A stretch of DNA of 64,000 nucleotides, from IMG/VR virus record IMGVR_UViG_3300020147_000065, positions 62,001 to 126,000 of that record; one strand, 5' to 3'. Position numbers and translations under genes: made by a program. Below, piece by piece: positions 8,859 to 44,900 of the stretch. Each line of letters opens with the position of its first letter. The stretch's first letter is position 1. The notes beneath the pieces were generated by a model. That model did not search any database. It worked only from the letters and a program-made list of their open reading frames with translations, and was not told where the DNA came from.

Positions 8859-9451
8859 TGGCACTCAAAGAAAGTCCTGTTAGAGAACAAAATTTATTAC
8901 CCAAATGTTTCCAGTTGGGAGCATTACATAACGACCATCACAATCCATTTCTGGAAGCAGGAGCATGTTTGTTTGGCGACGAGATTGTTATTTATGATGT
9001 TGATGGAACAATCATAAATATCGAACATCGCCTCAAATATCTCACTCAAAAACCCAAGACGGATTGGAAAAGGTTTCTTGCTGAAATCGGAAATGACACC
9101 TGCTATGAACACATCAAAGAAATGGTTGTAGAAGATTTTATTTCCGGTAAAACTGTTTGTTTGGTGACTGCTCGAAATGAAGGTCAAGCACCAGAAACAA
9201 TCGCACAGATGCAGCAGTTCGGTGTTCCTTATCATTACCTCTTCATGAGAAAGAAGGGGGACTACCGATGCGATACAATCGTCAAAGAAGAAATCCTACG
9301 TCTTCTTCCGAAGGAGAAAATTCTATACGTAGTGGAAGACCGGCCACGGGTGATAGACATGTGGAGGCAGAATGGCTTAAAAGTAATTGCCGTCAACACT
9401 GCACCAGATTATGACTACACCAACGCCGCTACTGCCGAGGACTGTGAATGA
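8858..9451 (+). CDS. HAD-family 3'-phosphatase (T4 PNKP phosphatase-domain-like)
   Basis: DVDGT, VTAR, LFMRKKGDYR.D..VK, EDRPRVIDMWR. Confidence 0.88.
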   Translation: MALKESPVREQNLLPKCFQLGALHNDHHNPFLEAGACLFGDEIVIYDVDGTIINIEHRLKYLTQKPKTDWKRFLAEIGNDTCYEHIKEMVVEDFISGKTVCLVTARNEGQAPETIAQMQQFGVPYHYLFMRKKGDYRCDTIVKEEILRLLPKEKILYVVEDRPRVIDMWRQNGLKVIAVNTAPDYDYTNAATAEDCE

Positions 9452-10098
9452 CAGCCAAGAAAGGTCGAAAAGTAAAGACTATAGCCTATCTCACATGCAT
9501 CATGCTGTGGATGGGCTTTCTTTCTACTCTTCTGATATGGCAAGCCCGTAACCAAACAATGGCTGAGCGTCTTCAGTTGAAGACGAGTGCATCCAGAGAA
9601 ATACGTGATCTTGCAATTAGTTATCGTAAAATGGAGAGTAGCGCCAGAGCATATTATTTTACACATAATGATGCCGTGCTGGATAGCTATAACGCTGAGA
9701 AAAAAGGTATTCAGAGCTTATTCGACAACACTAAAAAGGTTGTTCTTGCTGCGGACTCAGATGAAGTAGAAAGCTTCAATGAGATGAACAAACTTTATAG
9801 TGAGTGGTTCTCTTTCACAGAAAAAGGTATCAGTTATATTCGCACATCAACGTCCAATGCGGACGAGTTGGTAAAAAAAGATGTCTACGAGCGTAAAACC
9901 CGTATTGACAAAATTGACTACATCCTGCATACTCTAATGATGAAGCAGGATAGCGAGTATGATGCTCTTACTAAAACGTTTGAGGATTCACAACGTGTTT
10001 TCTGGCTTATCCTGATGTATTCGTCTCCGGTGTTTTCAATCAGTATTTATCTCCTTCTTTTATTGGTTGCTGAGGCTTCCAAAAAAGAACCGAGATAA
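9448..10098 (+). CDS. Stand-alone CHASE3-like membrane sensor (two TM helices, no output domain)
   Basis: TM - helical bundle with MESSARAYYFT....LDSY - TM, then stop. Confidence 0.7.
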   Translation: MTAKKGRKVKTIAYLTCIMLWMGFLSTLLIWQARNQTMAERLQLKTSASREIRDLAISYRKMESSARAYYFTHNDAVLDSYNAEKKGIQSLFDNTKKVVLAADSDEVESFNEMNKLYSEWFSFTEKGISYIRTSTSNADELVKKDVYERKTRIDKIDYILHTLMMKQDSEYDALTKTFEDSQRVFWLILMYSSPVFSISIYLLLLLVAEASKKEPR

Positions 10099-25423: not shown

Positions 25424-25620
25424 AGTGTTTCCTCTCTATTGATTACAACTTTTAGAAGACGTTTTGCACGACGTAAGCTGCCAAGATCGGGAGTCTCTTG
25501 ATGTTGTTGAAGTAGTTTGATTATTTCGTCTACTTCACGTTCAATAATCACTTTCTTCATTATATATTTAATTCTCCACTCAGGTAAATTACTTTTAACA
25601 ACGGGTTTTTCGATTCTCAT
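25420..25620 (-). CDS. Hypothetical protein
   Basis: ATGA overlaps on both sides. Confidence 0.55.
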   Translation of the reverse strand: MRIEKPVVKSNLPEWRIKYIMKKVIIEREVDEIIKLLQQHQETPDLGSLRRAKRLLKVVINREETL

Positions 25621-26078
25621 TTCTTCTCCAAATCATAAATTGTAACACAGTGATTACGAAGAGTGTCTTTGATAATTAATTCAATCACATTCCAGTCTCC
25701 GCCACCCAGTCCAGCCCCAATTCGGGGCATATGAATACTCGCATTTAAAACAGTTGCTCTCTTGTGTAACTGCCATAAACAACGAGTAAGTTGTGTATAT
25801 GACACCAGAGGCTTAGCACCTCTAATAAAACCACCCAGCCCGTTTTGGGCGCACATATTAGCTACCCACAGGTCATTCTCTACCTGAATGGTTTGAACTG
25901 TTCCCAATTGATAAGGACGGCCCCAGCTTCGATAGGCAATTTCAGGTTGCTTCCATCTCTTGGAAATGGCTACGACGAATCCTGCGCCCCATCCACCCTC
26001 ATTGTTGGTTACGTGAGCAATGATTTTATTACCATCCCCCGTGGGTTGCGTTGCATCACCTTTAACATAGTTAATCAT
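25617..26078 (-). CDS. Macrodomain protein (Poa1p/SCO6735-like ADP-ribose processing)
   Basis: YVKGDAT, IIAHVTN..GGWGAGF, VANMCAQ, HMPRIGAGLGGGDW. Confidence 0.92.
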   Translation of the reverse strand: MINYVKGDATQPTGDGNKIIAHVTNNEGGWGAGFVVAISKRWKQPEIAYRSWGRPYQLGTVQTIQVENDLWVANMCAQNGLGGFIRGAKPLVSYTQLTRCLWQLHKRATVLNASIHMPRIGAGLGGGDWNVIELIIKDTLRNHCVTIYDLEKK

Positions 26079-27847: not shown

Positions 27848-27882
27848 AAAAAGAAAGGGGAGGCCGCGAAGCCTCCCCTTTT
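27848..27882 (-). terminator. Intrinsic terminator ending the kinase/vWA operon
   Basis: Minus strand GGGGAGGC-ttcgcg-GCCTCCCC-TTTCTTTTT. Confidence 0.85.
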
Positions 27883-27884
27883 CC

Positions 27885-28664
27885 TTATCCACCGAATCCA
27901 CCGGCGAACTGCGAGGCCACGTTTGCAGCCGACGATTGCGATACCTTCTGGCTAACTCTCGATACCATCTGGAAGACCTTCATGATTTCCTTTGGATCAT
28001 CATCTACAGTCTTAATCCACTGGTCTTGTAAACCCCAATTCTTAAACTCCTGATGGAAGTCTGTATACCCATCGTGGATACCAATACCGATGATAATGTG
28101 AGTTTCCTCAAGAATCATTGGCTCAACGATTCGCTTGATAGCATCCGTGCTTACCGAATCAGTGTTTCCGCCATCTGTAACAAAAGCAGTAATTGTACGA
28201 ACGTTGGCAGCAGCATCATCGAATTCTTTATACTTCTCACGAACGTTGAAACCAAGAACGCTTACGGCAGTTGAACGTAAAGGTGTGTGTCCACCCATCG
28301 AATGGCTACGAGCATCAAGTTCGGTTGCATTATCAATCTGCACCCACTGACTTACTACTCCACGATTCAAAAGCGAACTATGAAACAGGATACCGTCGCG
28401 CTGGGCCATACGTTTTAGGTCTTTGATGATGCTATTATGACCTTCGATGGCCAATTCCCAGTTACTTAAACCTTTGGGATTCTTTGTGCGGTCACCATTG
28501 ACTCTACTCATCGAACCTGAATCATCAATTACCAGAGCTACGAGACAAACCTCAGTAGCATTAACATCATCAGCCGAAATACCGTTTCCGGCGTTAATCA
28601 GGTTGCCGATACCTACAATTTGTAAAGCCTCATCCGAAGGAGGCGTCATGATTTGCGAACTCAT
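27885..28664 (-). CDS. vWA-domain protein (TerY/YegL-like)
   Basis: MIDAS DDSGSMS, GHTPL, FVTDG. Confidence 0.85.
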   Translation of the reverse strand: MSSQIMTPPSDEALQIVGIGNLINAGNGISADDVNATEVCLVALVIDDSGSMSRVNGDRTKNPKGLSNWELAIEGHNSIIKDLKRMAQRDGILFHSSLLNRGVVSQWVQIDNATELDARSHSMGGHTPLRSTAVSVLGFNVREKYKEFDDAAANVRTITAFVTDGGNTDSVSTDAIKRIVEPMILEETHIIIGIGIHDGYTDFHQEFKNWGLQDQWIKTVDDDPKEIMKVFQMVSRVSQKVSQSSAANVASQFAGGFGG

Positions 28665-28676
28665 TATTAATCACCC

Positions 28677-29720
28677 TTAATTATACAACCAGTTTAAGTC
28701 GGTTGTCGTTACCAAACTCATTCCAGCCTTTTCAAAGCTGTCCAATGCTTTGTTAGCATCATCGGTATAATCAATTACACCAGGAATTACTACAGGACTC
28801 ATGCAGTCACGTAAGATAGCAACTTTACGGGCTAATGTTGGATCAATCTGAACCAATTCACCCAGGAAGTCTGCGATACTCCATGCTACACAATGCGAAG
28901 CAGCTTCTCCAACGAACACAATCAAGTCGTAATTGATTACTTTCTGAATGAACGCAGCATTCCGCTGTCCAATCACTTCACCCTTTGGACCTTTGAGGAC
29001 TTCGGGTTTGAATACCGAGTAGTTCTCAGTAATTAGTGTACCACCTTTAGTCTCAATGGTAGGATTGGTTCCACGAGCAAATCCGTGAAAATACATTGCT
29101 TCGTAGAGAGGCTCAATTAGGGCGTGATTGACCGAACCGAGCATTGCGTGGTAAGGCCAGATTGTGAGGTTATATTTACCCTGCTCTTCAAGCGAGCGGC
29201 AGTAGTATTGGGCGTAGTTGCTAAGTGCTACATAGTTACCTGTACCATTAGCAGTTGGAGCAACTTGTCTTGCGATTGCTGGATTAACACGATACTTACC
29301 CTCTTTGAGGTCTTTCTCGGTAATCATAGTGAAGGGATCAACAGGTGTCCCATCTTCCTTGAGGAAGAACATTGGATGGAAAATCTGACTTGCCACATGG
29401 GTATCCATCGTAGCCGCAATGTCAGTAATTGCATTCATGTTTTGGTAGATAAACTCAGTAATCTTACGAGCATCATCTACCGCTCCAGTGCCGCTACGTC
29501 CACCCACGTAGAGTTCGGCACCTGGTGTACAGAAAGTCTTCTGCATGTCAATCATAACGAGACAGACTTTCTTCGCATCTTTGGCTGCGTTTGTAATGCC
29601 ATTTTTCTTGGCGTATTCGAGAGCAGCAGGTTGTACTGCGTTGAGGTCCACGTTGTATGGTGGGCGCTGGAAATCAGCAGGATTATATGTTGCGGGTAAT
29701 GGTGTTGCGTTCATTATCAT
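28677..29720 (-). CDS. Nicotinamidase/isochorismatase-family cysteine hydrolase (long form)
   Basis: IDMQKTFC, MDTH, WPYH, TKG, GEAASHCV (Asp-Lys-Cys triad). Confidence 0.9.
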   Translation of the reverse strand: MIMNATPLPATYNPADFQRPPYNVDLNAVQPAALEYAKKNGITNAAKDAKKVCLVMIDMQKTFCTPGAELYVGGRSGTGAVDDARKITEFIYQNMNAITDIAATMDTHVASQIFHPMFFLKEDGTPVDPFTMITEKDLKEGKYRVNPAIARQVAPTANGTGNYVALSNYAQYYCRSLEEQGKYNLTIWPYHAMLGSVNHALIEPLYEAMYFHGFARGTNPTIETKGGTLITENYSVFKPEVLKGPKGEVIGQRNAAFIQKVINYDLIVFVGEAASHCVAWSIADFLGELVQIDPTLARKVAILRDCMSPVVIPGVIDYTDDANKALDSFEKAGMSLVTTTDLNWLYN

Positions 29721-29727
29721 TTCCTTT

Positions 29728-30009
29728 TTACGTCAAGTACTCCGCGTGTTTAAATCCAGGGAGACTTCCGTATTCGTTTATGTACACATTTGCCTCAGCA
29801 ATTGTGACCGTAAGCAAGTTCTTTACAGCTTGTTCATAAAAACAGTTAGTCGGGTTGTTGAAAGGTCTTACATCAGACCAGGATTTATAGCTCTTAACCA
29901 GAGAGTCATATAATTCTTGAACAAACTCCTGGTCATAGCCTTCGGATGTTTCCTGGATTATCATGTGCAACAACTCACATGTAGCCAGAATTCCTTTAGG
30001 TTTCTCCAT
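29728..30009 (-). CDS. Hypothetical protein
   Basis: Directly after an internal consensus promoter. Confidence 0.6.
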   Translation of the reverse strand: MEKPKGILATCELLHMIIQETSEGYDQEFVQELYDSLVKSYKSWSDVRPFNNPTNCFYEQAVKNLLTVTIAEANVYINEYGSLPGFKHAEYLT

Positions 30010-30019
30010 AGTAATTTAC

Positions 30020-30048
30020 ATTCTACCGCATCCCACGGGGTTTGTCAA
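30020..30048 (-). promoter_or_regulatory. Internal sigma70-type promoter
   Basis: TTGACA-17 nt-TAGAAT on the minus strand. Confidence 0.8.
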
Positions 30049-30629
30049 GGGGCTACATCCATCAACATATCGGCCAGAACGAAGGCATGGCCCATTGGTC
30101 GTTTGTCGTAGCGCAGAACATCTTCGAGGGTCATGCCCATCTTCTCATAGTCGTAACCATCGAAGTCCCAAAGGGTCAATTCCCCTTCTTTTTCATAGAG
30201 TTCATATAACGTCTTCCATGCCTGAGATTTTACTACAGCCTGAGAGTAAAGTGTTACATAAATTTTGATTCGAGCATCAATGTAACCAAGTTGCTCTGCT
30301 TCATCAAAATCACCATACGGGCCGAGATAAGAGTATAAGGGTTTAGCTCCTTTACCCATTGGGTAACGGTCAGCCCATTCTTTTTGAAATCCCGCTTTAG
30401 ACCATGCAAACCATTTTTCGCTGGGTGTTCCATCAGGATTTGTATAACCTTGATATACTTTACTGTATTGCCAACCGTTTTCGACATTCTTCGCATGAAT
30501 GTTGCGATAATGAACCGGCCCAAGAAAGAACGGGCTAAGTCCTTTGCTCCAATTTGTAGATTTAGATGTGGTGTTTACCAGAGGACAAGAAAATCTATTC
30601 TCGTCTCGTGGTCCAATTACGTGAATCAT
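30045..30629 (-). CDS. NADAR/YbiA-like (DUF6939-type) protein
   Basis: LSPF, NVENGWQYSKV, GYIDAR.KIY..LY, GHAFVL. Confidence 0.55.
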   Translation of the reverse strand: MIHVIGPRDENRFSCPLVNTTSKSTNWSKGLSPFFLGPVHYRNIHAKNVENGWQYSKVYQGYTNPDGTPSEKWFAWSKAGFQKEWADRYPMGKGAKPLYSYLGPYGDFDEAEQLGYIDARIKIYVTLYSQAVVKSQAWKTLYELYEKEGELTLWDFDGYDYEKMGMTLEDVLRYDKRPMGHAFVLADMLMDVAP

Positions 30630-30651
30630 TATTACCTCCCCATCGGCCCAA

Positions 30652-32547
30652 TTAAGGGCCGATGGTTAATTTAAGAATATCCTGACGGTTGACTGCATAC
30701 AAACCATCAGGCCCAGCAAGTAGAACGGTCTTCGAGTTTACGAATTGTTCGGTGCCATGAAACACCTTGTCTGGAACAAGCGAATTGTTTACAATGCTTA
30801 CTCGCACGATACCGTTATCAGTTGCAGCCAAAAAGAACTTTCCAATCGCACAGTTACCTCGCACACGTTGCCAAGCGGTTTCATCATCTTCCTTAGCCTC
30901 GTGGAAAGCCAGAATTTTACCATCTTTCCCTATAGCATAAGTACGGATAAGACGTTGCGAACCATCATTCATTAAGGCAGTGAACCAGGCTATGTCTTTT
31001 CCAAAGATACATGATGAATCAATAAGCTGTCCGCGGAAGTTCGGTAATCTGACTGAATCATCAATACCAATTTTTTCGGCGTCGAATACGAAACCAACGG
31101 TTACTGCTCCGGCTCGGTAAAAACCAAAACCCATTGTTTCTCCAACCCAAAATAAAGTATTGTTTTCGAGTACCTCACCGATCTTTACTTCACCAAAAAC
31201 ATCATCGCGTTTCAAGACTCCACCAACAACCCAAAAGCGATTACGACTGTTAGCATCGAACATCGGAATATTTTGGTAATCATCAATAACTACGTTGTTA
31301 TTTACATTACCAAATTTATCACGTACATTACCCAGGCAAGTATTAATCATATTGTTCTGTCCAATATGAAGTAAGTCTTTGCTTACTCGAAAGCGGGTGA
31401 ACGGTGTGATGTTTACTTTGCTAACCACGGCATAATTCGATCTTAGTCCTGCCCCATCTTCATAAACCATACGAAGTTCATCCTGATAGACGGCGTATAA
31501 AATACGTCCGTCGGTATGAAAAACATTCTCCATGTAAACATTGTTTACATGGGCCACCACAGGAATAACAGCTTGTTGTGGTGCGGTTGTGCAATTTGGA
31601 CAGGTGCTTCGGGCATGAAGTAATCCACAGTTGGTACACTTTGTCCAGCGAAGACCGGCGAGTAGTTTCTCAGGAAATTCTCCACGCTTTTTATGCGAAA
31701 ATACTTCTTCAAAATGATCGAGTAATTCATCTGGTAGTGTCTTTAGCGGGGTAGCGGCTTTCGGATATTTGACTCTGCTATCAAAAACTGATATACCAAG
31801 CAGAGGTCTATTACCAAACGCAATAGTCTTATCATCCAGTTTTCCACCATAAGGTCGAACAAACATAAGGCTATTGAAAAGCATAGTGTTAAACGCAAAC
31901 CAGTCGGTATCTGGACTATGTGGTTTGATAGGGTAGAAATAAGGTTCTGTATCATTAGTTCGTTTCTTGTTCAACTCGCAAATTGTGGGGTCAACAAAAT
32001 TTTCGTTGAAGACCACACAGAGGTACGGATGAAACTGCCAGCTGTCTGCATCAATGAAGTAAGCAGAATCATTTTTATTACCAACCAAAACATTTAAATC
32101 GTTGAAGTCTCCGATTACAATACTTGCCCCGTGGATGGCCCTAACTGTCCCATGAACATCTTGAAAGATACGAATAACTCTTTCATTAGGAACACCCGCA
32201 TCACGGAAACTTCGTTGGTTAAGTTGACCCAGCAAGAAAGTATCCTGCAAAAAGTCCATCGTATAACCAACCATTTTTCCTTTACCGTCTACAGCTAAAC
32301 TCTGAGGTACGACTACTTTGTTTGTGCTGATTTTAGGGAAATTAGCTAACTTCTTTTCATAGAGGTTAAGTTTTTGTTCTGCCGCTGCTTGGCGAGCAGG
32401 ATTACCTGCGTAATCAGGATGTTTTGGTCCCTTGAAAAGTTTTAGAGCAGTGTGTGGATTGACTTCATAAATATCAGCTTCACCACCACTTCCACGTAAT
32501 CTCTTCGGTGTTGGATTAAATTCTTTACCATTTATAAAAACTGGCAT
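30652..32547 (-). CDS. Ser/Thr protein kinase (YegI/TerY-triad type) with Zn finger and beta-rich C-terminus
   Basis: GSGGEADIY, ALKLFK, H...VIGDFNDLNVLV, FIDADSWQ, DWFAF, CTNC...CPNC. Confidence 0.88.
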   Translation of the reverse strand: MPVFINGKEFNPTPKRLRGSGGEADIYEVNPHTALKLFKGPKHPDYAGNPARQAAAEQKLNLYEKKLANFPKISTNKVVVPQSLAVDGKGKMVGYTMDFLQDTFLLGQLNQRSFRDAGVPNERVIRIFQDVHGTVRAIHGASIVIGDFNDLNVLVGNKNDSAYFIDADSWQFHPYLCVVFNENFVDPTICELNKKRTNDTEPYFYPIKPHSPDTDWFAFNTMLFNSLMFVRPYGGKLDDKTIAFGNRPLLGISVFDSRVKYPKAATPLKTLPDELLDHFEEVFSHKKRGEFPEKLLAGLRWTKCTNCGLLHARSTCPNCTTAPQQAVIPVVAHVNNVYMENVFHTDGRILYAVYQDELRMVYEDGAGLRSNYAVVSKVNITPFTRFRVSKDLLHIGQNNMINTCLGNVRDKFGNVNNNVVIDDYQNIPMFDANSRNRFWVVGGVLKRDDVFGEVKIGEVLENNTLFWVGETMGFGFYRAGAVTVGFVFDAEKIGIDDSVRLPNFRGQLIDSSCIFGKDIAWFTALMNDGSQRLIRTYAIGKDGKILAFHEAKEDDETAWQRVRGNCAIGKFFLAATDNGIVRVSIVNNSLVPDKVFHGTEQFVNSKTVLLAGPDGLYAVNRQDILKLTIGP

Positions 32548-32550
32548 AGA

Positions 32551-33375
32551 TTACACCTTCTTTCCTGCAATAATAGTAGTATCATCCACTAAAACTGTGT
32601 TATTTTGTACCAATTGAGTGGTAACACCGTTTACTTTCTCTTCATCATCTACGACTTTCACCTTTGGTACTCCCCCAGCAAGGCGACGAAGAGGTAATTC
32701 AAGACCATTCGCAGCGAAAGGATTCGCTGAAAATGGAATATCTTTCAAAAATTCTTCAATCTTCATTGGTAGATGATGAATACCATCGGTTGCTATCTCG
32801 AAATTCTGAACATCTTCTACTTTATATACAGCGATATTTTCCAAATCTGCGTTCACATCGTAGTCTTTTGGAAAGGCTCTGTACGCAAGATAATTTGGTG
32901 CATTTCCTTCGAAGTCAGGATCATATATTACTTCTCCATTAACTCGAATTACTCCATCACCACAAGCCACAAAAATCAGATTATTACGAAATTTAACAAA
33001 ACCAATAATTGTGAATAAAGTATATTGCCACAGCGTCCCAATCTTTTCCTCTTCGAGTTGAAAACTCATATTCAAAGCGCGGAGTGATGCAAGCATTCTT
33101 CTTCCTACCATCAACGGAATAGCATCAATAATAGCTTTTTCTTCCCAATCGTTTTGAATTGCTTCATTGATGAATCTCAGCGTTTGTGCAGAAAACGACC
33201 TCGCACCGAGGATAGCTCCAACTTCCGATTTCTCACATGATCCACAACCATCTGTTACAACACCAACCATCAAGTCTTCTGTTCCGTGCTCTGCTAAATA
33301 GAACGAATCTTGATTATTCAGAAAGTGTTGCAGGTGGTGTTTACCTCGTACACTTCCGTATGCGTATTCAAACAT
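32551..33375 (-). CDS. PP2C-like protein phosphatase (YegK type)
   Basis: GSVRGKHH..NQD, VTDGCGS, GDG, ATDG, DDTT. Confidence 0.9.
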   Translation of the reverse strand: MFEYAYGSVRGKHHLQHFLNNQDSFYLAEHGTEDLMVGVVTDGCGSCEKSEVGAILGARSFSAQTLRFINEAIQNDWEEKAIIDAIPLMVGRRMLASLRALNMSFQLEEEKIGTLWQYTLFTIIGFVKFRNNLIFVACGDGVIRVNGEVIYDPDFEGNAPNYLAYRAFPKDYDVNADLENIAVYKVEDVQNFEIATDGIHHLPMKIEEFLKDIPFSANPFAANGLELPLRRLAGGVPKVKVVDDEEKVNGVTTQLVQNNTVLVDDTTIIAGKKV

Positions 33376-33784
33376 TATTATCCTCTATGATAAATCTGGC
33401 TTCACATCGCCAATAACGATTACCCCTGTAATCGTGTGCTGGTTTCCCAAAGGGAGTCTGTTGGTATTTAGACGGTACTCCGAACGTGTGATGATAACTC
33501 CATTGAAATCTGGTAATCTCGTATAATGATTCACCGACTCTAACCAGTTCACCGACCTTGGGTGGCTTTACTGGCTCTTTACCGAACATCTTGAATCGGT
33601 TACGACAACCATACATATTACCCTTACGAGTTCTATTTGGTCTTGCAATCAATACGTCGGACATTCTTCCTATCCAGACAGAATTTCCCAAGTCTCTCAC
33701 TTTCTCTTTACCTACCTTACCTTTATTACTCCCTTCTGAAAGTAAACGTCGGGTCATAGGTTTCGTTAAAACCGGGTTTGTCAT
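33368..33784 (-). CDS. Basic hypothetical protein
   Basis: GGAAGG SD; overlaps the PP2C start. Confidence 0.6.
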   Translation of the reverse strand: MTNPVLTKPMTRRLLSEGSNKGKVGKEKVRDLGNSVWIGRMSDVLIARPNRTRKGNMYGCRNRFKMFGKEPVKPPKVGELVRVGESLYEITRFQWSYHHTFGVPSKYQQTPFGKPAHDYRGNRYWRCEARFIIEDNNV

Positions 33785-34133
33785 ATATTACCTTCCATCC
33801 TTCTTTTCTATAGGTGTCTTCAACATTCAGATAATTCTTGTCATAAACGGCACCAAGTCTTATACGAAGTTTCTTCGCTATTAAACTGGCTACATCTTTA
33901 GCTTTGAATTTAGAGTAACCTCCTACAGCATTGGAGACTATCATTTCGTTGAAGGCTTGGAAAACTTCTTTTGGGAAGACCGACTTCTTTGCAATGGCAA
34001 CCTCATCGGGTCTGATTGGGCGATCATCAGGAATCATTTGTTCTTTTCTTAATGCTCGTCGAGCGGTATCAGCTTCCGCCTGAGCTTGTGCTAAAGCGGC
34101 CTTTTCTTCCGCTGATGGAATTATTTCTTTCAT
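33726..34133 (-). CDS. Phage hypothetical protein
   Basis: First gene after the minus-strand promoter; GAGG SD; P.EVF.AFNE...VED.YR..GW.V.YDKP. Confidence 0.7.
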   Translation of the reverse strand: MKEIIPSAEEKAALAQAQAEADTARRALRKEQMIPDDRPIRPDEVAIAKKSVFPKEVFQAFNEMIVSNAVGGYSKFKAKDVASLIAKKLRIRLGAVYDKNYLNVEDTYRKEGWKVIYDKPGFNETYDPTFTFRRE

Positions 34134-34152: not shown

Positions 34153-34213
34153 ATTATAGCACAGAAAAAGATGCCCGTCAACCCTTGACACTAATCGCCA
34201 TAAGTTGTATGAT
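34153..34213. promoter_or_regulatory. Back-to-back divergent sigma70 promoters
   Basis: Minus: TTGACG(34181-34176)-17-TATAAT(34158-34153); plus: TTGACA(34185-34190)-17-TATGAT(34208-34213). Confidence 0.85.
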
Positions 34214-34237: not shown

Positions 34238-35722
34238 ATGTTAAACGCACTGAGAGCTTTGGAGCTACATGGACGAGGTTGGAACGTTGTGCCATTATTA
34301 GAAGCATCTAAAAAGCCGGTTGGTGGACTCCCGTGGGGGAAATTCAACACGATTAGACAGTCGCATGATGAAGTCAAGCAGCTTTTTGCTGACCACGGGG
34401 GTAATGTAGGTGTAGTATGTGGAGAAGTATCTGACAATCTGTTTGTGTTGGATTGCGAAACGGACGATGTATTCAACGAACTATGGAAAGCAACAAAGCA
34501 TCTTCCTGTTCTCGTAGTTAGAACACCCCGCGGTGGGCATATTTACGGACGATGTGAGTTCCCCGTTAAACCACGCACCATTGATACCAAGTGGGGTAAA
34601 GTCGAAATTCGTTCTAATGGTCAATACGTGGTCAGCTATGGTTCAGTTCACCCCAACGGCATGGAATACATGCTCATGACCAATCCTGAAACCATTCATA
34701 AGTTTCCTCTTGGTAAATTAGCCGGAGTTGAGTGGCTCGTTCTTGAATATGATCCAAAGAACACCGAACTGAAGAAGATTCTCCGTGATTCAGGTATTGC
34801 TGAGAATCTTGCGAAGGGTTACACAAGCCGCTCAGAAGCAGAGATGGCGTTAATTACACTGATGGTGCGAAAGGGATACGATAAAAACGCAATCAGTAGT
34901 TTCTTGTCTTCGTCTGGCTATGGGGATAAGTTTGTGGAAATGCAGGATAAGTCCCCATCAAGGGCCTTTGCGTGGCTCGATTTGTCCATCAAGAAGGCGC
35001 AGAATCTCGGTCACACTCAGGAATTTACCGAAGTTCAGCGTAATATGTCAGACCTGAAGACTCTTTTAGTTTCGGCCTCCTTACGAGGCCGAAAGGGGGC
35101 AACACTCTATAAAGCCCTCCTCGTTCACATTAACACCTGTGATGCGTCGGGCAAGAAAGTTTATCATCTTTCCATTCGTGAAGGATGTGAAAAGGCAGGA
35201 ATGTCTCACCCGACATTCATGAAAATGAACGCCGAATTAGTTCAAATGGGACTTGTTGAGATTGTCAAGGCAACCAAAGGTATCGAGGGAAACAGCTACT
35301 CACTAAACCAGAAAGCTGTAAGAGAGTTTTTGGAAAGTCTTAATCTCCAAGACTTTAACACTCATATAAACACCCATGTGACTAATTGTGAAAGTTTTGG
35401 CGTTTTAGGTTTGTTTGAGGTTGGAAGCTTTGGTCACTCGGCTAACCAGATTTACAACATCTTGAGAACGAATCCTGGGCTAACCATCGCCCAAATCTCT
35501 AAGTCAACAGGTCGTGCTGATAACACGGTGCGTCGAGTCTTGACAAAGATGGCCGAAAATGGTATAGTTAAGAGAGAAGAAAATGGGACATGGAAGACGC
35601 TCGACATTGACCTCAAAGAGTACGCAGTGACCTCTGGTTCTGTGGGTAAGTTCTTGAAGAGGCGGTATAGACACATCAAAGAGCGTCAAAATTACAGGGG
35701 AGGTAAGGGTGGAGAAATCTAA
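34238..35722 (+). CDS. Second Prim-Pol (AEP) fused to helical and winged-helix domains
   Basis: GWNVVPL..KKP, NVGVVCG, VLDCE, TPRGGHIY, EIRSNGQYVV..SVHP, SRSEAEMAL; C-terminal wHTH. Confidence 0.85.
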   Translation: MLNALRALELHGRGWNVVPLLEASKKPVGGLPWGKFNTIRQSHDEVKQLFADHGGNVGVVCGEVSDNLFVLDCETDDVFNELWKATKHLPVLVVRTPRGGHIYGRCEFPVKPRTIDTKWGKVEIRSNGQYVVSYGSVHPNGMEYMLMTNPETIHKFPLGKLAGVEWLVLEYDPKNTELKKILRDSGIAENLAKGYTSRSEAEMALITLMVRKGYDKNAISSFLSSSGYGDKFVEMQDKSPSRAFAWLDLSIKKAQNLGHTQEFTEVQRNMSDLKTLLVSASLRGRKGATLYKALLVHINTCDASGKKVYHLSIREGCEKAGMSHPTFMKMNAELVQMGLVEIVKATKGIEGNSYSLNQKAVREFLESLNLQDFNTHINTHVTNCESFGVLGLFEVGSFGHSANQIYNILRTNPGLTIAQISKSTGRADNTVRRVLTKMAENGIVKREENGTWKTLDIDLKEYAVTSGSVGKFLKRRYRHIKERQNYRGGKGGEI

Positions 35723-39970: not shown

Positions 39971-41928
39971 TAAAATTCTCCCGTGGATGGCGTTTCCACA
40001 ACATCATTAACAGCAAATAATGTTTCACCATTCGCAGTTATGACTTCACTCTGAAGATCAACACCAGAAGCATCGTCTTCATTGTCTTGACCTATAATCC
40101 TATCTTCGATACGCAATACTTCAAGAGGAAACGCAGTACTCTTTGACACCTTACTTACCGTTAAGGCTCCGTCTTCTTCGCTAAGAGGTGCTTTCTGGAA
40201 TACCACAAGTAGTGCGTCACCGGTACCGTCGGGTGCATCAGTTAAAATAATTAGGCGACTGTCATAAGTCGCCGGTGTTATTACTTCACCGTTCTCTATT
40301 ACAGCATGAGTCAATTCCTTTTCAAGTTGATACATGAAGGTAGGAGATACGATGTTCCCACTGCTGATTTCAGGTACCTCGATGGGCCGATTATCGTTCC
40401 AGCTAAGGTCCATGTTCATTTCAAGTAGCCCGGTGTCAACACCAACAAATGGCCTTTTCTCTTGCTCTCCAATTCGAGCTAAAGCAAAGGAAACCGGCGA
40501 ATATGTACCCGGCACCGTGGCTTGCAATTCAAATGTATCAGTAGTAGCAGTACGTATGAATATCTCACCACTATCCAGGAGAACCGCATTTTCAGATACG
40601 AATACAATGTCTCCAGGGAAGTTATCCGCTGTTTCGCTGAAAGGAACAACAGTGGGGTAGCTCCATGTGCGCTCTGTGCCCTGAGAAATGTATAATTTAT
40701 TCGCTTTGGTTAGAATGATACTTCCAGGCTCTACGAATATTTTATCCGGCACAAAAGGAATATCCCACAACTTCCTCATATCAAAGGTGGCATACATCGC
40801 AAGAGAGTCTGCTCCCTCGTAGAATACGAGTCCCTGTTCTGCGGATTTTTCAATATGAGTTACATTACGAGACTCACCACGAGGTAGGATAGTTAATGAA
40901 CTATCCCCAAGGGTAGTATCAATGACTACAAGTTGATTATCCTGTGCCAGATAGATTTTATCATCTATGATCGCGGCATCTGTCACTCCGGTAAAACCAA
41001 GAGTTGAAATATCTTTAACCAACGTAATTCCGGTGGCAATAGAATAACGATAAATCTTGAGAGGATTCTTCGTGTATATTGTTAGAATACCATCCTCATG
41101 CTGGCGAACTTTCAAGATTTGATCTGCGGCAAGACGTATTCCAGTAAACATATCCTGTGGTGTAATCAATACACCAAAGAATAATTCCTTCTGTGCTGTC
41201 CCAAGTTCGGCAGTTGCTCCAAATTGGGCGATATTAGCCTCACGGTAATTTTTAGTTGCTACTAATTTACCTGACACGGCTTTCCACATGGGACCTTCTT
41301 CCCAGGGAATTTGTTTAAATTGTTCCCACCATTCAAGAGCTTGTTCATCAGTGAAGCCCTCTGGAAGGGCTTCACCTTCTGTTCTAAATCCAATCTGCAT
41401 CCATTTCTTTCTAAGTGAATTGGTGCTCAAAGAACCAGCCTGAATACCGAACAGAGCTTTAGTAATCTTGTAATTACTTCTGTTGATACTCAAAGGAAAT
41501 TCTTTTGCTTGAATATTATTGTTTAAGTCGTTTTCGATGTTTACATTAACAGCGTCTCTCGCCCACAAGCCATCACTACCGAGTGCGAATGCTTCAATGA
41601 GTGCTGGGCCATTCAGGTGATTTCGAGTGTCCCATTCCATAGAAAAGGTATCTGCGTCAATTACCTCAAGACCATTTCTAACAATCTTTGGTGTTGTTCG
41701 GCAGATTTGATAGGCTGCCTGTTTACTTCCAGCAACCGACCTCCAACGAATGAAATAGGCGAGTGAAGACACCGGAGTAAAGATTTCATATACACCCTCA
41801 CTCGTAGGGCTTTCCTCAACTCCGGTGCCTGACCATGCGGTTAACGGGACTCCATAGTAGTCGTATATTCTATACTCTACGTCCCATAGCCCCGTTATTC
41901 CTAAATTAGCAAATAGTAACTGTTCCAT
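39970..41928 (-). CDS. Putative virion protein, beta-propeller-like
   Basis: 652 aa, TAATG-coupled, short beta-strand repeats. Confidence 0.55.
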   Translation of the reverse strand: MEQLLFANLGITGLWDVEYRIYDYYGVPLTAWSGTGVEESPTSEGVYEIFTPVSSLAYFIRWRSVAGSKQAAYQICRTTPKIVRNGLEVIDADTFSMEWDTRNHLNGPALIEAFALGSDGLWARDAVNVNIENDLNNNIQAKEFPLSINRSNYKITKALFGIQAGSLSTNSLRKKWMQIGFRTEGEALPEGFTDEQALEWWEQFKQIPWEEGPMWKAVSGKLVATKNYREANIAQFGATAELGTAQKELFFGVLITPQDMFTGIRLAADQILKVRQHEDGILTIYTKNPLKIYRYSIATGITLVKDISTLGFTGVTDAAIIDDKIYLAQDNQLVVIDTTLGDSSLTILPRGESRNVTHIEKSAEQGLVFYEGADSLAMYATFDMRKLWDIPFVPDKIFVEPGSIILTKANKLYISQGTERTWSYPTVVPFSETADNFPGDIVFVSENAVLLDSGEIFIRTATTDTFELQATVPGTYSPVSFALARIGEQEKRPFVGVDTGLLEMNMDLSWNDNRPIEVPEISSGNIVSPTFMYQLEKELTHAVIENGEVITPATYDSRLIILTDAPDGTGDALLVVFQKAPLSEEDGALTVSKVSKSTAFPLEVLRIEDRIIGQDNEDDASGVDLQSEVITANGETLFAVNDVVETPSTGEF

Positions 41929-44900
41929 TAGTCCACTCTGCTTCCTACCGGAAGCCCTCTAACAGAGATTTCCTCATGGGAGTGACCGTCCTCATCGGTC
42001 ACAACCATCGTTATACGACGAATAAAGTACACGTACTCATTTTCGTCAGGGGTTGTTATATTAATGGTAGCCGACTGGGAAATCAAATCTACCTCAAGAA
42101 CTTCACTGTAATCCCCATACTGCTTAACAGTCTCGTCCTCCTCGTTCACTATCAGGTTATAAGCTCTAACCTTGTAAAGGTATTTTCTACCTCGTCCCAA
42201 GAAATCAATATAACTTCCAACGGGAAGGTTTTCTGCTGTTAGAGGGTCTGGTAGTTCCAAAACATCATCTGGTTTATCGGCTGGAGCCAACCATTCATGG
42301 ATTGGGGTAGTGCCATAATCGGGAGTAGATGTCTTTTCTGCTCTCCATAGCTCTACACCATCAATCGGGTGACTACTTGATTCTTTCCAGGGGGCCGACT
42401 GAATGAAGACCTGGTGGTGGCTAAACGAACCAGAAACACCGAATACGTTTGTTATATCTCCAATATGCAACGGTGCATCCTGTTTTAGAGGAGTTAACGC
42501 CGTTTCAGTTAGATTCATAACTTGACCCGCTAAGGGACCAAGTACTTCACCTGAGTTGTTTGAGGCAACCCATCGAAGATCGTATTGATCTCCTGGTGTA
42601 AGATTTTTTAAGTTAATGACAACAACTGTACCGTTAGCCCAAGGTGCAACAGCAGCTTTCATTACCGTTCTACCGCTGTTTGTATAACGGTAAAGAGTAA
42701 GGTCATCACATCTTATTGGATAATTCCAATCAATTACGATGTCCATACGAGAAGCTTCTACGTTATCGTAAATGACTTCTCCGGGTAATCCGGCGGCCAA
42801 CTTTAATGTTGTTGCACTCGATTCAGGGCCTTCTACTTCATCCGTTGTGTTCCAAGAAACTGCACGGAAGAAGTATTCAGTGTCAGGTGTCAATCCTTCA
42901 AGAGTATATTCATCTCCTCCATCGAAGCTTACTTCTCCGCTGGAGTCTTCTATTCTATTCCAGGTGTCTCCATCCAGACTGTATTCAAGATATAGTCCAG
43001 TTGCCCTTGCAGGTAAAGCCGGAAGTATTAGATCAATTGTATAACGACCAATAAGCCCAGCAGTTACCAATCCTGGTACAGCAGGTGCAGCAATGTTTGT
43101 TGTTACAGCTAATGATAATCCTCTTCTTGCTTGAGGAGGATCACTATTTAACCACGCCACTGCCGCGAAGTAATATAAGGTTGATGGTGACAGACCTGTA
43201 ATATTTACAGTTGCTCCACCAGCGTAATCGGTACTATCGGTTTCCGTCCACGGGCCGTTAAAGTGAGGTGCTTTCCAGACACGTAAAGACGAAGCGTTTT
43301 CCGGTAACGCTGGAAGTGTTACCGTTACTGTAGTATCTGTTTTTGATACTAAAATAAGATTACCGGGTTTATCGGGGGATTCGCAGTCTCCTCCACCAGA
43401 ATTACTATCGCTGCTTTCAGAAGATACCAAACTCTGTTCTGATTCAGATGACATTGAATCACTTGAAGAAGAACTGTCTGGTTCGTCACTTGACACAGGA
43501 TTGCTCGATACAGGTTCACTACTTGTATCTGGGTCGCTTGATGCAGGGTCGCTTGATGCAGGGTCGCTTGATGCAGGGTCGCTTTCGAGATTACTACTTG
43601 ATTCCAGCGAGTCCGACGAAACGGACGAGCTGATTAATTCCTCAGAAGAAATACTTGTTTCATCCGAAGAATCAGAATTAGACGATAAAGATGCTCCGTT
43701 TATACGTAGGCATCCTGAGAAGCAAGCTCCTCCTGCAACTCTACCTCTTAGCTCATATATACCATCGGGCGCATCGAAAGGTGTGGTTAATCCCCAACTA
43801 CGAGCAGCGTCATTTAGTATTGTCGCTGTAAATCCATTGTCTTCAACACCAGGCGCTTCTGTCCAGAAATATCCAGAGTCAATGTGTCTGAGTGTCCAAC
43901 CCGTGGCAAGCACACTACCATTAACAGTAGGACATAGACCATCATATAGAGAAAAGTCAATGTAGCTACCGGCCTCTACCTCAGGAGGAGTAGCTTCACA
44001 CGCAATTACTGGTTCTGAGCATGGATTACTTTCTACCACATCGAATGTGGCCATTGCACAACGACCATCAAGAGTTTTTACGTAAACCTTGTAGTCATTG
44101 GCCTCAACCGCAGCAACGGGTACAAACAAACTAATTTGACCACTGCCTTTTATTCCAGCTTTGAATCCCGGAGTACCGTTGACACCTATTCTACCGGCAG
44201 AAACAGTAGCATTAGAACTATCTCTGACCTCCCAGTGGTCGGCAGATAACCATGCGATAGGAGCAGTACTTTCAGGCACCATAGCTCCACCACCAGGATG
44301 TAGGTATCGGTAATTACCACTACTACATTCGGTTACCTCTTCATCTTGTACCTCAATACAGAAAAGATTGGAATGTACTGACTCCTCATCTTCATACAAG
44401 AATCTGAGCTGATAAATTCCAGGATATAATAATCCAGGAGGAAGTTTAGCTGTGTATTCGTAGGTAGATGTAACATCTTTTGTTACATCGAAGTAACTAC
44501 CTAACGCACCTTGTAGAACCAAACCTTGACCATTGTACAAGGCCCAGTTGTTCTCAGTTGGGTATGCTAACCAATCGTCTTCATCGGTTACTGTTGCGGG
44601 TACATAGGGTGAAATAACCTGCTCGGTATCATCGCTGATAACCGTTGTTCCGGCAAAGCTTGGATCATTACCACAGAAAGTGTCCTTAACTTCTGCGAAA
44701 GTGAATGTTGCAGGATCACCAACAACTTCTTCATTGGTGTAACTGTTGTTGGCTCGTAATCTTACTTTATATGTTGCTCCCTGAACCACTTCAATAAATG
44801 GTGGATATAGAGTAACCTCAGATGGTCGAACGGAACCATAGACACCATATGGTGCCCAGGTAACGCCATTATCAGGACTGTATTCTAATGTCTCTAAAGT

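What the first reader, a model, noticed from the sequence alone, without database searches (positions are those of the whole stretch)
27885..33375. Phage-encoded TerY-P-like kinase/phosphatase/vWA triad merged with NAD+/ADP-ribose enzymes
Seen: one minus-strand unit, bounded by a consensus promoter (34153-34181) and a terminator (27848-27882), encodes PP2C phosphatase, Ser/Thr kinase, NADAR-like protein, a small ORF, nicotinamidase and a vWA protein. The catalytic or metal-binding motifs of the phosphatase, kinase, hydrolase and vWA look intact. Known: vWA + PP2C + kinase is the TerY-P triad (E. coli yegL/yegK/yegI type), described as a bacterial stress and anti-phage module. Inference: a phage carries the full triad with NAD-metabolising genes placed between the kinase and the vWA partner. 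This suggests a phosphorylation switch linked to NAD+/ADP-ribose status, used for counter-defence, host takeover or exclusion of rival phages. I do not recall this arrangement being characterised in a phage.
Basis: partly seen in the sequence, partly recalled or inferred. Interest (0 to 1): 0.88.

Follow-up and report, generated by a model that had tools for sequence, protein, structure and literature searches.

The report
Phospho-switched nicotinamidase cassette in a phage
A large phage carries a ready-made four-gene bacterial module, in which a kinase, a phosphatase and a vWA protein sit with a nicotinamide-degrading enzyme; in bacteria it lies inside NAD+ recycling gene clusters, so it is an uncharacterised candidate for NAD+ control in the phage-host conflict.

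Summary
Genes for a PP2C phosphatase, a YegI-like Ser/Thr kinase, a NADAR-like protein (DUF6939), a 93-aa orphan ORF, a nicotinamidase-like hydrolase and a vWA protein lie head to tail on the minus strand. A strong sigma-70-like promoter and a strong terminator bound the unit. All catalytic and metal-binding residues are invariant across relatives.

The nicotinamidase-like gene was not inserted into a triad in a phage. It is a core member of a conserved cassette, PP2C-kinase-nicotinamidase-vWA. That cassette turned up at 430 places in a collection of one genome for each of 185,579 species, and in 15 IMG/VR contigs. Of 68 loci with enough sequence, 62 carry all four genes. Only the DUF6939 gene and the orphan ORF are insertions specific to this phage.

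In cellular genomes the cassette sits beside NrtR (45 loci), NAPRTase (22), an NMNAT-NAD kinase fusion (13), Nudix and NadE. ARH, macro, SIR2, or NadE plus NAPRTase genes are repeatedly inserted within it.

Best reading: a TerY-P-type phospho-switch wired to a nicotinamidase, used in NAD+ salvage and ADP-ribose turnover, and captured by large phages. A counter-defence role is inferred, not shown. I found no prior description. Novelty: new variant of a known kind.

The parts
34153..34181 (-). Sigma-70-like promoter of the unit: TTGACG-17-TATAAT with an extended-10 TG. It faces a plus-strand promoter-like site at 34185-34213 for the Prim-Pol gene.
   Evidence: Consensus match only; not shown to be used.
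33726..34133 (-). First gene of the unit, about 135 aa if it starts at the ATG at 34133 behind a GAGAGGA ribosome-binding site. Function unknown.
   Evidence: No Pfam, PHROG, NCBIfam or PADLOC hit. Absent from related loci.
33368..33784 (-). Second gene, 138 aa, function unknown. It overlaps the PP2C start codon by 8 nt.
   Evidence: Absent from related loci.
32551..33375 (-). PP2C-type Ser/Thr phosphatase (274 aa), PphC/YegK-like.
   Evidence: Pfam PP2C_2, E=8.6e-12. hhalign to E. coli PphC gives 96.9%, E=1.9e-10. Invariant metal-site residues D23, D42-G43, D140, D197-G198 and D264-D265.
30652..32547 (-). YegI-like Ser/Thr kinase (631 aa). Residues 1-300 form the kinase domain, a Cys4 zinc ribbon lies at about 304-319, and residues 331-629 form an all-beta C-terminal domain.
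   Evidence: hhalign to YegI gives 97.9%, E=4e-13 over residues 15-327. AF2 pLDDT is 89. Foldseek matches protein kinases at prob 1.0, TMt 0.55-0.67. Invariant residues: G21, G22, K36, D147, N152, D166, D168, C304, C307, C316, C319.
30640..30665 (.). Perfect 10-bp palindromic hairpin that spans the kinase stop codon, directly before the GGAGG ribosome-binding site of the DUF6939 gene. No T-run follows it on the minus strand.
   Evidence: Function unknown.
30045..30629 (-). DUF6939 protein (194 aa), a distant member of the NADAR superfamily and a candidate ADP-ribosyl glycohydrolase. This insertion is specific to this phage.
   Evidence: 1264 homologs, most carrying PF22075. AF2 pLDDT is 95. 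The only meaningful Foldseek hits are NADAR 8bat (prob 0.87) and YbiA 2b3w (prob 0.77). The Atlas neighbours are NADAR-DarT1, NADAR and Phage_30_3. Absent from all other cassette loci.
30020..30048 (-). Internal promoter-like site: TTGACA-17-TAGAAT, 11 of 12 matches.
   Evidence: Consensus match only.
29728..30009 (-). 93-aa orphan ORF. It is uncertain whether this is a real gene.
   Evidence: Only itself was found among 1.84 billion representative proteins. No family hits.
28677..29720 (-). Nicotinamidase-like cysteine hydrolase of the isochorismatase fold (347 aa). It is a core member of the cassette.
   Evidence: Invariant D58, K225 and C277 (catalytic triad) and D106, H108 and H191 (metal site) align with PncA D8, K96, C138, D49, H51 and H71. 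NCBIfam PRK11609 gives E=6e-5 but scores below its cut-off. Atlas clusters are named 'putative nicotinamidase/isochorismatase', score 0.98, TM 0.95. Found in 90 of 100 loci.
27885..28664 (-). vWA-domain protein (259 aa) with a complete MIDAS motif and a conserved Ser/Gln-rich C-terminal tail.
   Evidence: Invariant D47, S49, S51, T127 and D164. Atlas vWA clusters, score 0.95, TM 0.70-0.87. The match to E. coli YegL is weak (hhalign 29%, E=5.7e-4).
27854..27881 (-). Intrinsic-terminator-like hairpin: 12-bp stem, then CTTTTT.
25617..26078 (-). Macro-domain protein (153 aa), 1.8 kb downstream and outside the unit. Homologs lie inside or next to the cassette in other large phages.
   Evidence: phrog_335, E=2e-29. 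Weak DarG and Macro hits. Homologs at L098:10891-11436 (between the nicotinamidase-like and vWA genes), L099 and L097.

Best explanation
The locus is a four-gene module: a PP2C phosphatase, a YegI-type Ser/Thr kinase (kinase domain, zinc ribbon, beta-rich C-terminal domain), a nicotinamidase-type cysteine hydrolase and a MIDAS-bearing vWA protein. In other words, it is a TerY-P-type phospho-switch permanently coupled to an enzyme that most likely deamidates nicotinamide to nicotinate.

The module was assembled in cells, not in this phage. In bacteria and some archaea it sits in NAD+ salvage clusters. Those clusters hold the ADP-ribose-responsive regulator NrtR, NAPRTase/PncB, an NMNAT-NAD kinase fusion, Nudix and NadE. 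Enzymes that make or remove ADP-ribose (ARH, macro, SIR2) have been inserted into it repeatedly. Large phages have captured it.

In this phage it is transcribed as one unit from a strong promoter. A NADAR-like DUF6939 gene has been inserted into it, and a macro-domain gene lies 1.8 kb downstream.

Proposed mechanism (inferred). When NAD+ is cleaved or used for ADP-ribosylation during infection, nicotinamide and ADP-ribose adducts build up. The kinase, sensing through its C-terminal domain, and the PP2C set the phosphorylation state of the vWA protein and/or the hydrolase, and this gates nicotinamidase activity. The nicotinate produced feeds the host's PncB-NadD-NadE route back to NAD+. DUF6939 and the macro protein strip ADP-ribose from modified targets.

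What is shown: gene identities, intact active sites, conserved synteny and the NAD-related neighbourhood. What is inferred: the substrate, the phosphorylation targets, the direction of regulation and the benefit to the phage.
For: - Synteny. 430 confirmed loci in genome contigs and 15 in IMG/VR. Of 68 loci with room, 62 have all four genes and 61 have them in the same order.
- Active sites are invariant in all four proteins.
- The kinase is YegI-like (97.9%) and has a protein-kinase fold. The PP2C is PphC-like (96.9%). In E. coli, YegI is an active Ser/Thr kinase and PphC dephosphorylates it (bioRxiv 10.1101/819920 and 10.1101/303594).
- Nicotinamidase signature, including the metal ligands that separate nicotinamidases from other isochorismatase-fold enzymes (established knowledge of the PncA active site).
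- Neighbours in cellular loci: NrtR in 45 loci, NAPRTase in 22, the NMNAT-NAD kinase fusion in 13, Nudix in 8, NadE in at least 3.
- Insertions inside the cassette: ARH in L003, L017, L026, L074 and L056; SIR2 in L056; macro in L098; NadE plus NAPRTase in the large-phage contig L096.
- DUF6939 is NADAR-like, and the window also has a macro gene.
- A related phage (L001) keeps the cassette next to the same Prim-Pol/DNA polymerase genes.
- NrtR is the ADP-ribose-responsive regulator of pncA/pncB/nadE-type genes (PMC2330246).
Against: - No enzyme activity or phosphorylation was measured.
- The hydrolase falls below the Pfam and NCBIfam thresholds for isochorismatase/nicotinamidase and is about 150 aa longer than PncA, so another substrate is possible.
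- At least four cellular loci (family 7) also carry a canonical PF00857 isochorismatase-family gene nearby, confirmed by Pfam for L006. That would be redundant if both are nicotinamidases.
- By HMM search of its ORFs of 80 aa or more, the window has no NrtR, NAPRTase or NMNAT-NAD kinase gene. NadE was not searched for. The phage would therefore depend on host enzymes.
- ADP-ribose-related insertions occur in only about 10% of loci, and some share ancestry.
- The vWA match to TerY/YegL is weak.
- Nothing shows that the three regulatory proteins act on the hydrolase rather than on another target.
Confidence: 0.55

Rival explanations
1. The module is a TerY-P-type immune or exclusion system. The phospho-switch senses infection, or superinfection by a rival phage, and turns on the nicotinamidase as the effector. 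Destroying nicotinamide would lock in NAD+ depletion. It would also starve the nicotinamide-dependent NAD+ reconstitution pathways (NARP1, NARP2) of competing phages. In the phage the module would serve superinfection exclusion.
For: - TerY-P-like modules protect against phages (Gao et al. 2020, as summarised in PMC11090510).
- A SIR2-domain gene is inserted between the kinase and the hydrolase in L056.
- Uma2 endonuclease-like genes lie inside or next to the cassette in L003 and L026.
- NARP1 and NARP2 both consume nicotinamide (bioRxiv 10.1101/2024.02.11.579819).
Against: - The recurrent neighbours are NAD+-building genes (NAPRTase, NadE, NMNAT-NAD kinase) and the salvage regulator NrtR, not defence genes.
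- No PADLOC model matches the PP2C, the hydrolase or the vWA protein. This test is weak, because the E. coli YegI/K/L control is also negative.
- Nicotinate still feeds NAD+ synthesis wherever PncB is present, and PncB is often encoded next door.
Confidence: 0.2
2. The 347-aa hydrolase is not a nicotinamidase. It acts on another amide or on an ADP-ribose-linked substrate, or it works as a nicotinamide sensor. The cassette would then control protein or nucleic-acid ADP-ribosylation rather than NAD+ salvage.
For: - It fails the curated family thresholds.
- It carries about 150 extra residues.
- A canonical isochorismatase-family gene lies nearby in some loci.
- It is fused to an unknown 225-aa 'X domain' in five loci.
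- ARH, macro and NADAR-like partners all reverse ADP-ribosylation.
- ARH-vWA fusion proteins exist.
Against: - All six PncA catalytic and metal-binding residues are invariant.
- NAPRTase, the enzyme that uses the product nicotinate, is the second most frequent neighbour (22 loci). In L096 it lies inside the cassette together with NadE.
Confidence: 0.15
3. The genes are neighbours by chance or are unrelated cargo genes. There is no functional unit.
For: A possible internal promoter lies at 30048-30020. The DUF6939 gene and the 93-aa ORF are unique to this phage.
Against: The four core genes keep the same order in 61 of 68 loci across cyanobacteria, candidate-phyla bacteria, myxobacteria, acidobacteria, archaea and large phages. 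Intergenic gaps are 3-35 nt.
Confidence: 0.02

Closest known systems
TerY-P triad (Anantharaman, Iyer and Aravind 2012, as defined in PMC11090510); the E. coli example is yegI / pphC (yegK) / yegL
   Same: It has a vWA protein with MIDAS, a PP2C phosphatase and a Ser/Thr kinase followed by a zinc ribbon, all in one gene cluster. The kinase and the PP2C are detectably homologous to YegI and PphC.
   Different: - A nicotinamidase-like gene is a fixed fourth member, placed between the kinase and the vWA gene.
- After the zinc ribbon the kinase carries a roughly 300-aa all-beta domain. E. coli YegI has a membrane-spanning C-terminal half instead (10.1101/819920), and the TerY-P-like defence modules of Gao et al. 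2020 have an OB fold.
- The vWA protein is only weakly similar to YegL.
- The neighbours are NAD+ salvage genes, not ter genes, restriction systems or CoCoNuT systems.
PncA nicotinamidase and the NrtR-controlled Preiss-Handler salvage cluster (pncA-pncB-nadD-nadE; PMC2330246)
   Same: It has the same catalytic triad and metal ligands. In 45 and 22 cellular loci respectively it has the same neighbours, NrtR and NAPRTase, along with NadE and an NMNAT-type enzyme.
   Different: - It is about 150 aa longer than PncA and falls below the family thresholds.
- It is always accompanied by a kinase, a phosphatase and a vWA protein, which no described pncA operon has.
- In the window the other salvage genes searched for (NrtR, NAPRTase, NMNAT-NAD kinase) are absent.
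Phage NAD+ reconstitution pathways: NARP1 (Adps + Namat), NARP2 (Nampt + Nmnat) and NARP3 (PnuC + NadR) (10.1101/2024.02.11.579819; PMC13464706)
   Same: These are phage-borne genes that act on the breakdown products of NAD+. Related large phages carry the cassette together with NAPRTase, and L096 also with NadE, which would complete a route from nicotinamide to NAD+.
   Different: The chemistry differs (deamidation, the Preiss-Handler route). The window holds none of the other salvage enzymes searched for. A signalling triad is attached. No counter-defence activity has been shown.
NADAR and macro-domain (DarG-type) ADP-ribosyl glycohydrolases, the antitoxins of DarT1 and DarT2
   Same: DUF6939 has a NADAR-like fold, and its nearest annotated Atlas neighbours are DarT1-associated NADAR antitoxins. 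The 153-aa macro protein weakly matches DarG.
   Different: There is no significant sequence match to NADAR or YbiA. No DarT partner is present. Activity is untested.

Membership tests
TerY-P triad | A vWA (TerY-like) protein with a MIDAS motif | tested here: met
   D47-x-S49-x-S51, T127 and D164 are invariant. The Atlas gives vWA clusters by features (0.95) and by structure (TM 0.70-0.87), including vWA-TerF-like families. Specific kinship to YegL is weak (hhalign 29%, E=5.7e-4).
TerY-P triad | A PP2C-type phosphatase | tested here: met
   PF13672 scores above its gathering threshold (45.5 against 24 bits). hhalign to PphC gives 96.9%. The metal-site residues are invariant.
TerY-P triad | A Ser/Thr kinase fused at its C-terminus to a zinc ribbon | tested here: met
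   Protein-kinase fold. The alignment to YegI runs through the zinc ribbon. C304, C307, C316 and C319 are invariant. A further beta-rich domain follows the ribbon.
TerY-P triad | The three genes form one conserved cluster | tested here: met
   although a fourth gene always lies between the kinase and the vWA gene.
TerY-P triad | Association with ter genes or with restriction/DNA-processing systems, or an anti-phage phenotype | tested here: not met
   The recurrent neighbours are NrtR, NAPRTase, the NMNAT-NAD kinase fusion, Nudix and NadE. The phenotype cannot be tested here. PADLOC gives no hit, but the E. coli YegI/K/L control is also negative, so that test says nothing.
Nicotinamidase (PncA) / isochorismatase-like hydrolases | Asp-Lys-Cys catalytic triad | tested here: met
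   D58, K225 and C277 are invariant in 36 sequences and align with PncA D8 and C138.
Nicotinamidase (PncA) / isochorismatase-like hydrolases | Nicotinamidase-specific metal site (Asp-x-His plus a His in the WPxH motif) | tested here: met
   D106, H108 and H191 are invariant. 'WPyH' aligns with PncA 'WPPH'.
Nicotinamidase (PncA) / isochorismatase-like hydrolases | A score above the curated family cut-off (Pfam PF00857 or NCBIfam PRK11609) | tested here: not met
   No Pfam hit even at E<=10. PRK11609 scores 22.9 bits against a cut-off of 174. The profile search against PDB finds only nicotinamidases and cysteine hydrolases, but at E values of 0.003-0.8.
Nicotinamidase (PncA) / isochorismatase-like hydrolases | Hydrolysis of nicotinamide to nicotinate | not testable with these tools
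   This needs an enzyme assay.
NADAR superfamily | Sequence match to NADAR models or to YbiA | tested here: not met
   No PF08719 hit at E<=10. hhalign to YbiA gives 0.5%. The window protein scores 21.4 bits on PF22075 (DUF6939), below the cut-off of 27, but its 50-59% identical relatives carry PF22075.
NADAR superfamily | NADAR fold | tested here: inconclusive
   The top two Foldseek PDB hits are NADAR 8bat (prob 0.87, TM 0.43) and YbiA (prob 0.77, TM 0.43-0.49). All other hits have E>2. Atlas structure neighbours named NADAR have TM 0.60, and feature neighbours are NADAR-DarT1, NADAR and Phage_30_3 at 0.78-0.84.
Phage NAD+ reconstitution pathways (NARP1/2/3) | The defining enzyme pairs (Adps+Namat, Nampt+Nmnat, PnuC+NadR) | not tested
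   None was seen among the roughly 30 window proteins scanned. HMMs built from the related loci for NrtR, NAPRTase and the NMNAT-NAD kinase fusion find nothing in the window. The window was not scanned exhaustively, and the remaining 157 kb of the contig was not available.

The most novel reading that the evidence does not exclude
The PP2C-kinase-nicotinamidase-vWA cassette could be a widespread, undescribed device that puts nicotinamide recycling under Ser/Thr phospho-control in response to NAD+ cleavage or ADP-ribosylation. Large phages would use it, with host or phage NAPRTase and NadE, as a fourth, Preiss-Handler-type NAD+ reconstitution route against NAD+-depleting immunity. In this phage it would be paired with NADAR-like and macro enzymes that undo DarT-type DNA ADP-ribosylation.
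Probability: 0.3. Interest if true: 0.8.

Novelty: new variant of a known kind. Interest (0 to 1): 0.62.

Why it matters
NAD+ depletion and its reversal are a central battleground between bacteria and phages, but the known phage pathways are simple, unregulated enzyme pairs. This would be the first case where a eukaryote-like kinase/phosphatase/vWA switch is tied to an NAD+-pathway enzyme.

The module is conserved at several hundred places in a collection of one genome for each species (430 confirmed) and in large phages. In cells it lies next to the ADP-ribose-sensing regulator NrtR. If the switch gates nicotinamidase activity, two things follow. It would give TerY-P-type triads a concrete output; their effector is otherwise unknown. 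It would also reveal post-translational control of bacterial NAD+ salvage.

The finding also flags DUF6939 as a NADAR-like candidate de-ADP-ribosylase carried by a phage.

Tried and rejected
- Megablast of 8 kb against GenBank phages found nothing.
- tblastn found only three uncultured huge phages and one fragment with distant copies, so no cultured phage model is available.
- Single-sequence searches of the kinase and the hydrolase against PDB found nothing useful. Profile searches gave only weak hits, though all were of the right kind. The vWA profile found nothing in PDB.
- PHROGs had no family for any of the six genes.
- PADLOC gave no system-level match. I rejected this as evidence against TerY-P membership because E. 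coli YegI/PphC/YegL are also missed.
- hhalign of DUF6939 against YbiA was not significant.
- I considered that many MAG-labelled loci might be mis-binned phages, because near-identical kinases carry different phylum labels. NrtR is present in 45 MAG and isolate loci and in none of the IMG/VR loci, which argues that most are cellular. This was not settled.
- The nrtX/nrtY genes of unknown function in the NrtR paper could not be matched to this cassette from the text.
- The 2012 TerY-P paper is not in the library.
- Literature searches combining nicotinamidase, isochorismatase or NrtR with vWA, PP2C or kinase found no description of the cassette.


Full report
**What is there**

The window is phage DNA. 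It carries a Prim-Pol primase, a family-specific DNA polymerase, a ribonucleotide reductase, RecA, a dUTPase and a tail-like giant protein. It is identical to part of IMGVR_UViG_3300020147_000065, a 221,108-bp contig.

Eight ORFs lie head to tail on the minus strand between 34181 and 27854, with gaps of 3-35 nt or short overlaps. Two features bound the unit:
- a sigma-70-like promoter, TTGACG-17-TATAAT with an extended-10 TG, at 34181-34153;
- a 12-bp-stem terminator at 27881-27854, directly after the last stop codon.

Both are consensus matches, not proof of use. A second 11/12 promoter-like site at 30048-30020 could drive the last three genes separately.

- The 274-aa protein is a PP2C phosphatase. 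Pfam PF13672 gives E=8.6e-12, and hhalign to E. coli PphC/YegK gives 96.9%.
- The 631-aa protein has no Pfam hit, only faint RIO, Bud32 and PD-T4-6 matches.
  - A 30-sequence profile aligns with E. coli YegI at 97.9% probability (E=4e-13) over residues 15-327, including the zinc ribbon.
  - The AlphaFold2 model (pLDDT 89) has a protein-kinase fold in residues 1-300 (Foldseek prob 1.0, TMt 0.55-0.67) and an all-beta domain of about 28 strands in residues 331-629.
- The 347-aa protein misses the curated thresholds.
  - It keeps every residue that defines a nicotinamidase: the triad D58/K225/C277 and the metal ligands D106/H108/H191. These align with PncA D8/K96/C138 and D49/H51/H71.
  - Its Atlas neighbours are annotated as nicotinamidase or isochorismatase.
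- The 259-aa protein is a vWA domain with an invariant MIDAS motif.
- The 194-aa protein belongs to DUF6939.
  - Its model (pLDDT 95) matches only NADAR (8bat) and YbiA (2b3w) among solved structures, weakly but specifically.
  - Its nearest annotated Atlas neighbours are NADAR-DarT1, NADAR and T4 gp30.3-like families.
  - Sequence comparison with YbiA is not significant.
- The 93-aa ORF is an orphan. Nothing but itself turned up among 1.84 billion representative proteins.

**What the relatives show**

The kinase has more than 1,200 full-length relatives at 40-46% identity. A scan of one genome for each of 185,579 species found 430 confirmed loci. A scan of IMG/VR found 15.

In the 100 loci held, tblastn with the window proteins finds the PP2C in 92, the hydrolase in 90 and the vWA protein in 84. 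Among 68 non-redundant loci with enough flanking sequence, 62 have all four genes and 61 have them in the order PP2C-kinase-hydrolase-vWA.

So the nicotinamidase-like gene is not an insertion into a triad. It is a fixed fourth member of a cellular cassette found in cyanobacteria, candidate-phyla bacteria, myxobacteria, acidobacteria, planctomycetes, DPANN archaea and large phages. The DUF6939 gene and the orphan ORF occur in this position only in the window.

The closest relative (L001, a 150-kb contig) keeps the cassette beside the same Prim-Pol and DNA polymerase genes but lacks DUF6939. In the kinase tree the two are sisters with 99 support, while cyanobacteria form one clade. The phage lineage has therefore carried the cassette for a long time.

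**The neighbourhood gives the function its direction**

Clustering the flanking ORFs of all loci, then annotating them with Pfam and recounting with HMMs, gives these recurrent neighbours:

| Neighbour | Loci |
|---|---|
| NrtR (Nudix plus NrtR winged helix), usually directly upstream of the PP2C gene | 45 |
| NAPRTase (PncB) | 22 |
| Nucleotidyltransferase-NAD kinase fusion | 13 |
| Nudix hydrolase | 8 |
| NAD synthase (NadE) | at least 3 |

NrtR is the ADP-ribose-responsive repressor of NAD+ salvage genes such as pncA, pncB and nadE (PMC2330246).

Other NAD-related genes have been inserted inside the cassette:
- ADP-ribosylglycohydrolase between the PP2C and kinase genes (L003, L017, L026, L074), or between the hydrolase and vWA genes (L056);
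- a SIR2-domain protein between the kinase and the hydrolase (L056);
- a macro-domain protein between the hydrolase and the vWA gene (L098);
- in the 253-kb viral contig L096, NadE and NAPRTase together between the PP2C and kinase genes.

The window itself has a macro-domain gene 1.8 kb downstream, and that gene's homologs are the ones inserted in L098. None of the IMG/VR loci has NrtR. The HMMs for NrtR, NAPRTase and the NMNAT-NAD kinase fusion find nothing in the window either. NadE was not searched for there.

**How it most likely works**

Shown:
- four proteins with intact active sites;
- obligate co-occurrence in a fixed order;
- a kinase and a phosphatase homologous to the E. coli pair in which PphC dephosphorylates the active kinase YegI (bioRxiv 10.1101/303594, 10.1101/819920);
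- a nicotinamidase-type active site;
- an NAD+ salvage and ADP-ribose neighbourhood.

Inferred: the kinase (through its beta-rich C-terminal domain) and the PP2C set the phosphorylation state of the vWA protein, whose conserved Ser/Gln-rich tail is a candidate acceptor, and/or of the hydrolase. This would gate the conversion of nicotinamide to nicotinate when NAD+ is being cleaved. The nicotinate then enters the PncB-NadD-NadE route.

In the phage this would keep NAD+ recycling going during infection. The NADAR-like and macro enzymes would remove ADP-ribose adducts. I put this at 0.55.

The main rival (0.2) is that the module is a TerY-P-type defence or exclusion system whose effector destroys nicotinamide. 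That would lock in NAD+ depletion, or starve nicotinamide-dependent NAD+ reconstitution by rival phages. The neighbourhood of NAD+-building genes argues against it. A second rival (0.15) is that the hydrolase has a different substrate. Chance adjacency is excluded by the synteny.

**Comparison with what is known**

By the definition quoted in PMC11090510 (TerY-like vWA, PP2C, Ser/Thr kinase with a C-terminal zinc ribbon), the triad features are met. Three things differ:
- the fixed nicotinamidase-like fourth gene;
- the kinase's extra C-terminal domain (E. coli YegI is a membrane protein, and the TerY-P-like defence modules of Gao et al. 2020 have an OB fold);
- the NAD+ context in place of ter genes, restriction systems or CoCoNuT systems.

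The known phage NAD+ reconstitution pathways are NARP1, NARP2 and NARP3 (10.1101/2024.02.11.579819; PMC13464706). They use other enzymes and have no signalling components. I found no paper describing this cassette. The 2012 paper that defined TerY-P could not be read, so a mention there cannot be excluded.

**Verdict**

The locus is a new variant of a known kind. It is an uncharacterised but clearly real module with a specific, testable link between Ser/Thr signalling and NAD+ metabolism. No cultured phage in GenBank carries it, so tests will need heterologous expression.

Noticed in passing
window 25617-26078 (-): A macro-domain protein (phrog_335, E=2e-29; weak DarG matches) lies 1.8 kb downstream of the unit. 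Its homologs sit inside or beside the cassette in three other large viral contigs (L097, L098, L099).
   Followed up: partly
window 30640-30665: A perfect 10-bp palindromic hairpin (CCATCGGCCC..GGGCCGATGG) spans the kinase stop codon, just before the ribosome-binding site of the DUF6939 gene. No T-run follows it on the coding strand. It may be a translational coupling or attenuation element, or a scar of the insertion.
   Followed up: no
window 29728-30009 (-): This 93-aa ORF has no relative among 1.84 billion representative proteins. It is preceded by an 11/12 promoter-like site at 30048-30020 that ends only 10 nt before its ATG, with no Shine-Dalgarno sequence.
   Followed up: yes
window 29124-29699 (+): A 191-aa antisense ORF inside the nicotinamidase-like gene gives tblastn hits in 36 loci. 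It is a shadow of the conserved gene on the other strand, not a gene.
   Followed up: yes
window 9448-10098 (+): A 216-aa phage protein carries a CHASE3 sensor domain (Pfam E=2.5e-11), which is unusual in a phage.
   Followed up: no
window 5849-6850 (+) and 34238-35722 (+): The window has two separate Prim-Pol genes. The second is fused to a MarR-like winged-helix domain.
   Followed up: no
window 41928-47366, 51890-57511, 60609-63851 (-): Three giant ORFs (1812, 1873 and 1080 aa). Two have no PHROG match, and the third has only a short tail-protein-like stretch.
   Followed up: no
L019, L020, L022, L051, L089 (N-terminus of the hydrolase); L096:4101-4775; L051:12860-13627; L020:12735-13424: An unknown 225-aa 'X domain' is either fused to the nicotinamidase-like protein or stands alone in the cassette. 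It has no Pfam hit and 88 homologs, all labelled hypothetical and some from Asgard-archaeon MAGs.
   Followed up: partly
L096:4785-7413: A 253-kb viral contig has NadE, a GIY-YIG homing endonuclease and NAPRTase inserted between the PP2C and kinase genes. Together with the nicotinamidase-like gene this makes most of a Preiss-Handler NAD+ route in a phage. NAPRTase is also present in viral loci L088, L095, L099 and L100.
   Followed up: partly
L028 vs L019, L077 vs L080, L029 vs L031, L064 vs L075: Nearly identical kinases sit on MAG contigs assigned to different phyla. This suggests mis-binning or a mobile element.
   Followed up: no
L004 / L005: On a 1.7-Mb contig the cassette genes are intact, but the flanking gene calls are mostly tiny fragments with no Pfam hits. 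The host may use another genetic code or the flanks may be degraded.
   Followed up: no
Atlas result for window 27885-28664: A cluster of 455 proteins fuses an ADP-ribosylglycohydrolase to a structurally similar vWA domain. This is an independent link between this kind of vWA protein and ADP-ribose removal.
   Followed up: no
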